Positions 45,001 through 48,000 of a stretch of 64,000 nt of DNA are shown piece after piece. Position 1 is the first letter of the stretch. The number at the start of each line of letters is the position of its first letter. The notes beneath the pieces are model-generated. The model did not search any database and was not told the DNA's origin. It saw nothing but the letters and a program-made list of their open reading frames with translations. Origin of the DNA: Ophelia neglecta. Its lineage: Eukaryota. The DNA lies in the NCBI GenBank assembly GCA_965285935.1, contig OZ260661.1, positions 116,312,001-116,376,000 of the forward strand. Direction: 5' to 3'. A program made the translations under genes and the position numbers.

Positions 45001-48000
45001 TGCGTATTGATTGCAGAATTAATCAGTTAATATCTTTATCATACATGGGTTCTGTTATTAGTTTGCTCATATTATTGCTTGTGATAAATATCAATGACCA
45101 GAAAAAGTCGGATTCATGAAATTGTTTAGGTAGAAGGCAAATATATTGACTAAGCAGAGTGCACTCTAATGTAAAACTGTTCACCAAAGCCCACTCTTGA
45201 ACAGAAATTCTATTGGGAGCATTGAACGTTAAGCACAATTTAGGTAATTAAGCACCTAGAAAACGAATTTGTGATGAATTATAAATTAATGGGTATTTAA
45301 TCATAATTTGAACTTTGTTGTTGTCGTGATTAGTGGAGCTGGCAAGAAGCCCTACCTGACTGCCCAGCAGTTCCGGGACTTTCTGAATGATGAGCAGAGA
45401 GACTCGCGTCTGAATGAGATTCTTTATCCTTACTGTGATCTGAAGAAGGCACAGACGCTAATAAACATGTTTGAGCCCAACCAAAGTCTCGCCAACAAAG
45501 GTAATCTATAACGATCCACCATACAGTGTGGGGCCTTAACTGTTCACTGGACAGTGTGAGGCACAAGCTGTACACCAGACAGTGTGGGGCCTTAACTGTT
45601 CACTGGACAGTGTGGGGCATAAACTGTTCACTGGACAGTGTGGGCATAAACTGTTCACTGGACAGTGTGGGGCATAAGCTGTTCACTGGACAGTGTGGGG
45701 CATAAGCTGTTCACTGGACAGTGTGGGTAAGCTGTTCACTGGACAGTGTGGGGCATAAACTGTTCACTGGACAGTGTGGGGCCTAAACTGTTCAATGGAC
45801 AGTGCGGGGCATAAGCTGTACACCAGACAGTGTGGGGCCTAATTTGTTCACTGGATAGTTTCATGCCTAAGGTGAGACCTGGACTGTGTGGGGTCTACTT
45901 TGTACACTGGATAGTGTAGGGCCTAAGCTGTACACTGGAATGTGAAGGGGCCTAAGCTGTAAACCAGACAGTGTGGGGTCTAAGCTGTATGCCTGAAAGT
46001 GTGGGGCTTAAGCTGTTTGACATTGTGGATCCTAAGCTGCTTGACAGTGTTGGCCCTAGTCTGTTTGACAGTGTGGGCCCTAGTCTTTTTGACAGTGTGG
46101 GCCCTAGTCTGTTTGACAGTGTGGGGCCTAGTCTGTTTGACAGTTGGGGCCCTAGTCTGTTTGACAGTGAGTGGGGACTAAGCTGTATGATGTATTCTAA
46201 TCGCAAGAAATGAAGCCACTGCCAAGTGATCAGACAATTATAAAGTATGAGCTATCCATAGTTATGTTTTAAGTACTAAACTACTCCTGACCCGTTACTT
46301 TAGAATTACTTATAGTTCTAACTAACGTTGCTAACATTTCAGATTCAGAAGTGCCGCCAGGTATGGTATTTCGCCGATAGTATTCATGTTTTTTATTCAG
46401 ATCTAGTGCATTTAGATTCTAGCTGTTTTAGTTTATCCTTGATATGATCTGCTGCTTAGGGACCCACCATTAAGAAAATTTGATGGAGGGCTAGAAGATA
46501 TGTGAGTGTCCCCAGACCTGCCTTTTTTTTATAGCAAAAATACATAGGAGATGATGCCTTAACCTGAGAGACCAAATTATTTGTCTTCAAATATGAAAAC
46601 CCAACTTTTTTTCCTCTTCGAAGTCTTCTAGCCCCCCCCCCCTGCCCTGCCCCCCCCCAGTCTGCTAATAATGCATCCTTTACATGGCATGTCAGTTAAT
46701 TTGATTCAGTTTCAGACTGTGCGTTGTTAAACAAACTCAATGGGTAAATTTTTTCTCATCATTTGATGCAACCTTTCAGTTTTTGTAATTCTCTTTGGTG
46801 ATAGTTTATTTGTTCAGAAGGCCTGATACCTATATATTAAACAGGGCTGTTTGACAATTAGTTTACAAACATTTATTGACTTACAGTTTTTTTTCAATCA
46901 GCTCCTCTTGGCTTTGTTTTATTGTATCCTATTGAATATATTTCTAAACACAAGAAAGGCTCCATTTAAGGAGAGACTATATTCGTGGCTATGATGGAAA
47001 GGGGAAAGAAGAAAGTAAATGCAAATGGCATGTGGCATACTTTGCATTTTATATGAAAATGAGAGTTCATATTGTAACCTAAACATAGCCTTCAATACTT
47101 CAAAAAAGATGGGAAAATCTGGTCTCCATCCTCCAAAGTTGTAATGGAAATATTCTTTTATTGTATTATAAAGTCAAAACCTTTGGTCTGTCATATTTTA
47201 GACAATATATTAGTTGTACTTTGTCACCTTATAAGTTTGCCTGGTTGATTTAAATAGGGGTTGATATGGAATTATATTTTTGTCATCAATACCATTGGTC
47301 ATATTCAAGTGTAGATATCCCATTATTGTTTTATATTAATTCAATTGGTTATGCTTATGAAATTAGCATAGCTTCTAGATAGTTTAAAAGCAAAGTTTGT
47401 ACATGTAAGTTTGAAGTGCATGGTATTTGTGCAATGAATTGACAGAAGGTCAACCAACATATATATAAGATGATTCTATGAAAGCATTTTGTTCTAAAAT
47501 TGTTATTTAACAACAAGATTCATTTAACAAAATATTAGTATTTAATATTTACGAGTTTGTACAACTTAGTTATCAAACATATGCAAGTATGCTCGTATCA
47601 GAAACTTTTTTTATCCCAACTACCAGACAGCACTTGCCATCCTTTTAAAATATTGAACAAAATCAAACTGAATTACATTTAAAAGTGTACTTAGTGATTT
47701 TCTTGATTGCATGTATTTGCAGGACACATTTCCCAGGATGGCTTTCTGAGGTACCTGTTGAGTGAGGACAATGTTCTGGTACCTTCCGAGAAGCTGGACT
47801 TAAACGAGGACATGGATCAGCCGATAGCTCACTACTTCATCAACTCCTCACACAACACATACCTTACTGGTAAGTGGCTACAGCAGCTCACCCACCAAAA
47901 CTATCAGACATGTGTAGAGTGTCATATATGCCATGTTGTTGATGATAGGAAATGACATCTTATTTGGTCTGATATTGTAATATATATTAGTTCCTTTATA

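What the first reader, a model, noticed from the sequence alone, without database searches (positions are those of the whole stretch)
46310..46370. 18-nt microexon candidate with a neural-microexon-like signature in the EF-hand region
Seen: ttctaactaacgttgctaacatttcag|ATTCAGAAGTGCCGCCAG|gtatgg within the phase-1 intron 45501-47722. It is frame-preserving and turns ...LANK-GHIS... into ...LANK-DSEVPP-GHIS.... It has a strong donor, clustered CTAAC/ACTAAC motifs and a TGC near the 3' splice site. Known: a UGC near the 3' splice site is the SRRM3/4 (eMIC) microexon enhancer, ACUAAC is the QKI/SF1 motif, and the EF3-EF4 region of PLC-beta contributes to Galpha-q contact and GAP activity. Inference: a possibly neuron-specific 6-residue insert that modulates Gq signalling; automated annotation would probably miss it.
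Basis: partly seen in the sequence, partly recalled or inferred. Interest (0 to 1): 0.75.

Follow-up and report, generated by a model that had tools for sequence, protein, structure and literature searches.

The report
Probable 18-base microexon in PLC-beta
A tiny 18-base coding segment inside an intron of a worm-like invertebrate's PLC-beta signalling gene is probably a real optional exon, because molluscs carry optional acidic mini-exons at exactly the same spot, but no RNA data exist to prove it here.

Summary
ATTCAGAAGTGCCGCCAG (46343-46360) lies between an AG and GTATGG in the phase-1 intron 45501-47722 of a PLC-beta gene. It would insert DSEVPP between ...SLANK and GHISQDGF.

Splice-site strength and open frame alone are at chance level, about 0.3 comparable site pairs per kb. 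Three things lift it above chance:
- It is the only donor in this intron that passes the filter.
- Directly upstream lies the only triple CTAAC cluster on either strand of the 64 kb.
- RefSeq and other isoforms of scallops, an oyster, clams, a zebra mussel model and an abalone differ at exactly this K|G junction by short acidic inserts (GDVEP, EEE, EQSSLDE, DGTLEE, EE).

No RNA run exists for this species, so splicing is not shown. Neural or eMIC regulation is only partly supported: UGC and CUAAY are present, but there is no long AG-free zone and no UCUC tract.

The insert lies in the EF-hand 4 loop, 28 residues after the Gq-GAP asparagine. It sits six residues before the equivalent of PLCB3 E294, a G-beta-gamma contact.

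I put the probability of a real alternative microexon at about 0.65.

The parts
45334..45500 (+). Upstream constitutive PLC-beta exon (EF-hand 3/4: ...GAGKKPYLT...[11 protein letters not shown]...[10 protein letters not shown] + first base of the split Gly codon)
   Evidence: Pfam EF-hand_like. PLCB3 chains match at 5e-12. Boundaries and phase (gattag|TGG, AAG|gtaatc, phase 1).
45523..46169 (+). Minisatellite in the upstream half of the intron (28-nt unit x17.8, 24-nt unit x7.3; GT- and G-run-rich)
   Evidence: Only a self match in the genome. Length differs between DNA contigs (joints).
46318..46335 (+). Three CTAAC motifs (one ACTAAC): probable branch points, with branch A at 21, 17 and 8 nt from the 3' splice site; also a STAR-protein (QKI/SF1-type) motif
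   Evidence: It is the only cluster of three or more within 25 nt in 2 x 64 kb. The motif-to-protein assignment is recalled, not tested.
46329..46331 (+). TGC at -14 to -12 from the exon
   Evidence: UGC near the 3' splice site is enriched at fly eMIC exons (PMC8797185 passage). A single TGC is weak evidence.
46341..46342 (+). 3' splice site AG (tttcag|A); first AG downstream of the CTAAC cluster; the previous AG is 25 nt upstream
46343..46360 (+). Candidate 18-nt cassette microexon, encoding D-S-E-V-P-P and the first base of the restored Gly codon
   Evidence: Single copy in the genome. No listed variant in 46299-46375 in the DNA contigs.
46349..46360 (+). Possible shorter 12-nt version (EVPP) from a tandem acceptor, cag at 46346-46348
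   Evidence: Inference only.
46361..46366 (+). 5' splice site CAG|GTATGG (7 of 9 consensus positions; the gene's own donors score 5-8)
47723..47869 (+). Downstream constitutive exon (last two bases of the Gly codon, then [11 protein letters not shown]...[13 protein letters not shown]: end of EF-hand 4 and start of the X box)
   Evidence: Pfam PI-PLC-X and EF-hand_like. PLCB3 at 1e-13. Boundaries.

Best explanation
The 18-mer is a real, alternatively included cassette microexon of this spiralian's PLC-beta gene.

How it would be spliced: the spliceosome would use one of the CTAAC branch points at 46318-46326, the first AG after them (46341-46342) and the donor CAG|GTATGG. That splits the 2.2-kb phase-1 intron into parts of 842 and 1362 nt. 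A 12-nt version from the tandem acceptor is possible.

What it would encode: inclusion puts six residues (DSEVPP, net charge -2) into the inter-helix loop of EF-hand 4, directly before the conserved Gly, without disturbing the frame. It is the positional counterpart of the optional acidic micro-inserts in mollusc PLC-beta isoforms.

What it would do (inferred, not shown): the insert changes an exposed surface. [quoted passage not shown] Inclusion is probably tissue-regulated by factors that read the CUAAC/UGC elements (SF1/QKI-type STAR proteins, SRRM eMIC). Tissue and regulator are untested.
For: 1. Sequence: AG, an 18-nt open frame and GTATGG in the right phase, with the Gly codon restored.
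2. Of 71 open in-frame AG..GT pairs in the intron, only three pass the site filter, and all three share this donor.
3. The donor (7/9) and acceptor (12/20 pyrimidines) fall inside the range of 12 resolved introns of the same gene (donors 5-8, pyrimidines 12-16).
4. The only triple CTAAC of the window lies 8-21 nt before this AG. Of 39 equally strong site pairs on both strands, only the two using this donor have a CTAAC 5-45 nt upstream.
5. Isoforms with and without an insert at exactly this K|G junction:
- Pecten 1 of 2 and Argopecten 5 of 7, GDVEP
- Mizuhopecten 8 of 11, GDVEP
- Ylistrum, GDIEP
- Crassostrea virginica 2 of 15 listed plus P0163, EEE
- Ruditapes 8 of 10 and Mercenaria 5 of 6, EQSSLDE
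- a Dreissena model, 1 of 6, DGTLEE (18 nt)
- Haliotis 1 of 3, EE
- Logan protein P0201, EK
6. A spliced transcript fragment from a Dimorphilus-like annelid (P0002) reads ...LASK-ESR-G and then intron-like sequence.
7. The 201 bases around the unit are single copy in the genome.
8. DNA contigs of the species differ from the window at 46293, 46298 and 46376, but at no listed place in 46299-46375.
9. The genome has an SRRM_C match over the Pfam cut-off (31.9 bits).
Against: 1. There is no RNA evidence. The one run search found three DNA-like runs of one sample and no RNA run, and the reads laid were DNA contigs.
2. Site strength and frame alone are at chance level: 39 comparable pairs in 128 kb.
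3. The acceptor is at the weak end of the gene's range. Its AG-free zone (25 nt) is not long, and there is no UCUC.
4. The insert sequences are not alignable between lineages, so homology rests on position and acidity only.
5. The nearest relatives seen lack an insert: Dimorphilus 3 of 3, Tubulanus 2 of 2, Owenia, Lingula and the Logan transcript P0004. So do many molluscs among listed isoforms: Magallana 15, Ostrea 14, Mytilus 15, Biomphalaria 11, Saccostrea 13, Mya 5, Patella 4, Physella 6. So do 117 arthropod proteins and the vertebrate representatives.
6. The variant-free span of 77 nt is not significant at about one variant per 57 nt, and 26 substitutions were not listed.
7. The SRRM_C hit is RS-rich and may be partly compositional.
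8. I could not see the evidence type behind the mollusc RefSeq models.
Confidence: 0.65

Rival explanations
1. Chance AG...GT pair. The intron is removed in one step and the 18-mer is never part of mRNA. The CTAAC repeat is a slippage product (CTAA-CTAA-C) without function.
For: About 0.3 equally strong frame-multiple site pairs per kb occur in the window. There are 71 open candidates in this intron. No RNA data exist. The nearest relatives seen have no insert. Insert peptides are not conserved in sequence. Two of the three CTAACs overlap as a 4-nt tandem.
Against: This is the only CTAAC triple in 128 kb, and it sits exactly where a branch point should be. Only this donor passes the filter in the intron. 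Optional inserts occur at the same junction in at least nine mollusc species.
Confidence: 0.3
2. The unit is used in splicing but not to make protein diversity. It could be a transient intermediate (a recursive or decoy exon that helps remove the intron and is then skipped) or a larger 45-nt exon from the TAG at 46313-46315 ([15 protein letters not shown]).
For: The 45-nt variant also passes the site filter and is open. The strong donor plus branch-point cluster could act as an intron-definition aid.
Against: A 2.2-kb intron needs no recursive step. The 45-nt variant would place the CTAAC cluster inside the exon. Scanning from branch-like motifs further upstream would meet a frame-breaking AG first (46303-46304; read). 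Mollusc inserts are 2-7 residues and acidic, not 15 hydrophobic residues.
Confidence: 0.05

Closest known systems
Optional micro-inserts in mollusc PLC-beta ('beta-1-like' / 'classes I and II-like') RefSeq isoforms, e.g. Pecten maximus XP_033734459 (with GDVEP) versus XP_033734460 (without)
   Same: Exactly the same junction: after the Lys that ends the EF-hand 3/4 exon and before the Gly of G-H-[LIF]-S. The insert is optional, 2-7 residues long, acidic, and the Gly is kept.
   Different: Sequence and length differ (DSEVPP versus GDVEP, EEE, EQSSLDE, DGTLEE, EE). Ours is in a different, worm-like spiralian.
eMIC (SRRM3/4-type) dependent neuronal microexons of flies and vertebrates
   Same: Length of 27 nt or less, frame-preserving, located in a surface loop of a signalling protein. 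UGC 12-14 nt before the 3' splice site and strong CUAAY branch points (PMC8797185 passage). An SRRM_C-type domain is encoded in the genome.
   Different: No long AG-exclusion zone and no UCUC-rich tract. Neuronal inclusion and SRRM dependence are untested. No PLC-beta microexon is named in the fly paper's main text (0 occurrences of Plc21C, norpA or phospholipase). Its supplements were not seen.
Human PLC-beta3 EF-hand surfaces: the EF3-EF4 connecting loop with Asn260 (Gq GAP) and the EF-hand G-beta-gamma site (K238, P239, Y240, E294)
   Same: RLNE (the Asn260 equivalent) and K-P-Y are conserved in the upstream exon. The E294 equivalent (D) lies in the downstream exon (PMC6499889; PMC10194004; bioRxiv 10.64898/2026.01.14.699417).
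   Different: No vertebrate representative among the proteins fetched shows an insert here. Whether invertebrate PLC-beta binds G-beta-gamma at this site is unknown. The bioRxiv figure legend says these residues are poorly conserved even among human isoforms.

Membership tests
Alternatively spliced cassette microexon (27 nt or less) | Short segment inside an intron, bounded by AG and GT, length a multiple of 3, open in the host frame | tested here: met
Alternatively spliced cassette microexon (27 nt or less) | Transcripts or junction reads showing both inclusion and skipping | not testable with these tools
   No RNA run for the species. Only DNA contigs were laid.
Alternatively spliced cassette microexon (27 nt or less) | Conservation in other species | tested here: inconclusive
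   The position is shared with optional inserts in at least nine mollusc species and perhaps an annelid fragment. There is no sequence conservation, and the nearest relatives seen have none.
eMIC/SRRM3/4-dependent neuronal microexon | UGC close to the 3' splice site | tested here: met
   TGC at -14 to -12. One trinucleotide, so weak.
eMIC/SRRM3/4-dependent neuronal microexon | Strong CUAAY branch-point sequence | tested here: met
   Three CTAAC at -25 to -8, unique in the window.
eMIC/SRRM3/4-dependent neuronal microexon | Long AG-exclusion zone and long UCUC-rich polypyrimidine tract | tested here: not met
   The AG-free zone is 25 nt; the four correctly placed acceptors in the same call gave 16-48 nt. 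Pyrimidines are 12 of 20 and there is no TCTC or CTCT.
eMIC/SRRM3/4-dependent neuronal microexon | Regulator with an eMIC (SRRM_C) domain present; inclusion depends on it and is neuronal | tested here: inconclusive
   PF15230 match of 31.9 bits (cut-off 27) at G000:C12:35078626-35078754, RS-rich. Dependence and tissue are not testable.
QKI/SF1 (STAR protein) regulated exon | ACUAAY core with a nearby UAAY half-site | tested here: met
   ACTAAC at 46321-46326 with further CTAAC 4 and 9 nt away. This holds at motif level only. The binding rule is recalled, not from a call.
PLC-beta (host gene) | PH, EF-hand-like, X and Y catalytic boxes and C2 in this order, with best matches to PLC-beta rather than other PLC classes | tested here: met
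   Pfam on the two flanking exons. PDB best hits are PLCB3. tblastn of PLC-beta proteins gives colinear exons from 30018 to 58461.

The most novel reading that the evidence does not exclude
An old spiralian (mollusc plus worm-like lineages) alternative acidic microexon in the EF-hand 4 loop of PLC-beta. It would be read by CUAAC/UGC-binding splicing factors in particular cell types, and it would retune how the enzyme docks G-beta-gamma (Gi/o input) or the membrane rather than Gq. That would be a splice-controlled switch of coincidence detection in a core signalling enzyme, never described in print.
Probability: 0.2. Interest if true: 0.65.

Novelty: new member of a known kind. Interest (0 to 1): 0.45.

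Why it matters
PLC-beta is the main effector of Gq and, through G-beta-gamma, of Gi/o receptors. If the microexon is real, spiralian animals make two versions of the EF-hand surface that in human PLCB3 binds a second G-beta-gamma. The mollusc isoforms then offer natural pairs for testing whether a few acidic residues in that loop change G-protein or membrane coupling. It would also add a well-placed case to the question of how old regulated microexon programmes are outside flies and vertebrates. Two searches for microexon together with PLC-beta terms returned 1 and 6 papers holding the words; a third was too loosely set to bear on the question. I opened two of these papers; neither concerns this junction. 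The other four I judged from titles and abstract starts only.

Tried and rejected
- RNA evidence. The look-up of sequencing runs gave no RNA run. Read laying could therefore only show DNA variation, and its variant-free span around the unit is not significant.
- Mollusc DNA.
- Structure. The loop position rests on sequence alignment to PLCB3 chains and on general EF-hand geometry (my own knowledge).
- Drosophila Plc21C. I suspected from memory that its two isoforms might differ at this junction. Among 117 arthropod proteins, 106 had the modal spacing. Six others were anchor or upstream-deletion effects without an insert on inspection, and five had no second anchor and were not checked. The idea is dropped.
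- Paralogues. No second PLC-beta copy of this exon was found in the genome (1 match, which is the window itself).
- Repeats. The unit is not part of a dispersed repeat, and the minisatellite is local.
- Boundaries. My first hand-read exon boundaries were wrong for 10 of 14 acceptors and most donors. redid them by frame logic: 12 of 16 adjacent exon pairs were resolved, 3 gave no consistent pair and 1 was dubious. Only the candidate's own values are used, plus the AG-free zones of its four correctly placed acceptors.
- Literature. One search was badly designed (any two PLCB names matched) and gave nothing. Supplements of the microexon papers were not seen and may list PLC-beta exons.
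Full report
**What is there.**
The window's + strand carries a PLC-beta gene. tblastn of annelid and other PLC-beta proteins gives colinear exons from 30018 to at least 58461. The two exons around the finding hit Pfam EF-hand_like and PI-PLC-X and match human PLCB3 chains best. The exon 45334-45500 ends ...[10 protein letters not shown] plus one base. The intron 45501-47722 is phase 1. The next exon, 47723-47869, begins with the last two bases of a Gly codon and then [11 protein letters not shown]. 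Inside the intron the sequence reads tctaactaacgttgctaacatttcag|ATTCAGAAGTGCCGCCAG|gtatgg, with the 18-mer at 46343-46360. Inclusion gives ...LANK-DSEVPP-GHIS... and restores the Gly codon.

**Is it more than chance?**
By frame and splice-site strength alone it is not.
- The intron holds 192 AG..GT pairs whose length is a multiple of three (3-51 nt), and 71 are open including both split codons.
- Across the window, 22 (+ strand) and 17 (- strand) pairs of 3-27 nt pass the same simple filter (YAG, 12 or more pyrimidines of 20, donor 7 or more of 9). That is about 0.3 per kb.

Three things set this candidate apart.
- Within this intron only three pairs pass the filter, and all three use the one donor at 46360|46361, with acceptors at 46316, 46343 and 46349.
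- The three CTAAC motifs at 46318-46335 are the only cluster of three or more within 25 nt on either strand of the 64 kb. CTAAC occurs 43 times per strand, and these three are the only ones in the intron. They lie 8-21 nt before the AG, which is the first AG after them. Of the 39 equally strong pairs, only the two using this donor have a CTAAC 5-45 nt upstream.
- The donor (7/9) is typical and the acceptor (12/20) is at the weak end of the 12 introns of this gene that I could resolve (donors 5-8, pyrimidines 12-16). That pattern is what one expects of a regulated exon.

The 201 bases around the unit are single copy in the 762-Mb assembly.

**Comparative evidence.**
A search of protein-cluster representatives with the upstream exon alone turned up a scallop protein with five extra residues at exactly the junction. 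Cluster members showed that listed RefSeq isoforms differ there.
- With an insert:
  - Pecten maximus X1 has ...MAAK-GDVEP-GHLSQEGF and X2 lacks GDVEP.
  - In Argopecten 5 of 7 listed isoforms carry it.
  - In Mizuhopecten 8 of 11 carry it.
  - Ylistrum has GDIEP.
  - Crassostrea virginica has EEE (2 of 15 listed isoforms, plus P0163).
  - Ruditapes has EQSSLDE (8 of 10), and so does Mercenaria (5 of 6).
  - One Dreissena model has DGTLEE, also 18 nt (1 of 6).
  - Haliotis has EE (1 of 3).
  - An unnamed Logan protein, P0201, has EK.
  - All inserts are acidic, start with G, D or E (as a phase-1 junction after a G requires) and keep the following Gly.
- Without an insert among the isoforms listed:
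  - Magallana 15, Ostrea 14, Mytilus 15, Biomphalaria 11, Tubulanus 2, Dimorphilus 3.
  - Saccostrea 7 and 6, Mya 5, Patella 4, Physella 6, two other Haliotis, unionids 2, Priapulus 3.
  - Owenia, Lingula and the Logan transcript P0004.
- Of 209 proteins of 300 aa or more with both anchors at that stage, 194 had the modal spacing. Eleven had the mollusc inserts and four were anchor artefacts.
- Of 117 arthropod proteins, none that could be read showed an insert. That was 106 modal and six anchor or deletion effects; five lacked the second anchor.
- One fragment, P0002, is a spliced transcript piece very like Dimorphilus PLC-beta. It reads ...LASK-ESR-G followed by intron-like sequence. It would fit a 9-nt microexon with its downstream intron retained, but its source is unknown to me and I could not check the DNA.

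By tblastn the window's gene is closest to Dimorphilus (70%) and Tubulanus (68%), so the animal is a spiralian of the annelid/nemertean kind.

**What could not be shown.**
- There is no RNA run for this species.
- Laying their contigs only shows DNA variation. Differences from the window lie at 46293, 46298 (one base missing) and 46376, and none of the 40 listed substitutions or 11 listed indels lies in 46299-46375. At roughly one variant per 57 nt, a 77-nt clean span is expected about a quarter of the time, and 26 further substitutions were not listed. This is compatible with constraint but is not evidence for it.
I therefore saw neither the mollusc introns nor a model of the loop.

**Regulation.**
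The fly eMIC paper (PMC8797185; passages read) lists four 3'-splice-site features of eMIC exons: long AG-exclusion zones, UGC close to the 3' splice site, long UCUC-rich pyrimidine tracts and strong CUAAY branch points. The candidate has the UGC (-14 to -12) and an unusually strong CUAAY cluster. Its AG-free zone is only 25 nt, and it has no UCUC. The genome encodes an SRRM_C match above the Pfam cut-off (31.9 against 27 bits), though the matched stretch is RS-rich. ACUAAY is also the core motif of QKI-type STAR proteins and of SF1 (recalled). So a regulated, perhaps neuronal, exon is plausible, but I rate neuronal or eMIC control at about 0.3 even if the exon is real. I did not test it.

**Where the insert sits.**
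Alignment to PLCB3 chains is gap-free across the junction. Y240 and E294 of PMC10194004 and K238 of the 2026 bioRxiv paper fix the numbering offset. Our K55 then corresponds to residue 288, the split Gly to 289 and the D of GHISQDGF to E294.
That is the N of RLNE, 28 residues upstream in the same exon.
- The insertion point is instead in the middle of the degenerate EF-hand 4 loop, just before the conserved Gly.
- In the cryo-EM complex of PLCB3 with two G-beta-gamma on membranes, the second G-beta-gamma binds the EF hands through a mostly electrostatic interface. E294 bonds G-beta W99, Y240 bonds D186, and P239 packs against M101 and L117 (PMC10194004, section 10 read). K238 meets G-beta D228 (bioRxiv 10.64898/2026.01.14.699417, passages). 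K-P-Y and the acidic residue are conserved here.
- In an EF-hand pair the two loops lie together at the end opposite the inter-hand linker (general knowledge). Direct action on the Gq GAP loop therefore seems less likely than an effect on the G-beta-gamma or membrane-facing surface.

This mapping is inference from alignment, not a test. The bioRxiv paper also notes that these residues are poorly conserved among human isoforms.

**Verdict.**
The best reading is a real alternative 18-nt (possibly also 12-nt) microexon, the counterpart of optional inserts that mollusc annotations already carry. I give it about 0.65, against about 0.3 for a chance site pair and 0.05 for a non-coding or differently bounded use. 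It is a new member of a known kind. It is interesting mainly because it points to an undescribed, possibly ancient splice-variable loop on a G-protein-binding surface of PLC-beta. Two literature searches for microexon with PLC-beta terms found no paper that, by its title and abstract start, is about it, and the two papers I opened do not concern this junction; a third search was too loosely set to count. Supplements were not available.

Noticed in passing
window 45523-46169: GT- and G-run-rich minisatellite (28-nt unit x17.8, then 24-nt unit x7.3) fills the first third of the intron just upstream of the candidate. It gives only a self match in the genome. DNA contigs of the species show a 247-nt skip and a 130-nt step back here, so its length seems to vary. 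Whether the repeated GGGG/GTGT units act as intronic splicing elements is unknown.
   Followed up: partly
window 46349-46360: A second in-frame acceptor (cag at 46346-48) six bases inside the microexon would give a 12-nt version encoding EVPP. This is a tandem-acceptor arrangement.
   Followed up: no
protein P0002, source not seen: A spliced transcript fragment very like Dimorphilus PLC-beta reads ...DQYEPNNSLASK-ESR-G and then AT-rich, intron-like residues. It is possibly a 9-nt microexon at the same junction in an annelid, with the downstream intron retained.
   Followed up: partly
proteins P0035 and P0097: P0035 is an Elysia-like spliced fragment that continues after the same Lys into a repeat-containing open frame, not a plain intron read-through. 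P0097 is an unnamed fragment with about 22 extra residues in the same loop. Other lineages may use this intron for other alternative exons.
   Followed up: no
window 46536-46717: The DNA contigs show two- to five-fold higher summed depth here, many loose ends at 46534-46613 and length variation in a C-run near 46620-46650. This is probably a dispersed repeat fragment plus a homopolymer inside the intron.
   Followed up: no
G000:C12:35078626-35078754 (L002): RS-rich exon matching Pfam SRRM_C (31.9 bits, cut-off 27). It is a candidate eMIC-type splicing regulator gene of this genome.
   Followed up: partly
PDB 3QR0/3QR1 (cephalopod PLC21): The matched ranges imply that the solved squid and cuttlefish PLC-beta has two more residues than this gene's skipped form in the same EF-hand 4 loop. 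The loop therefore tolerates length changes.
   Followed up: no
The same gene may thus carry at least two alternative-splicing modules.
   Followed up: no
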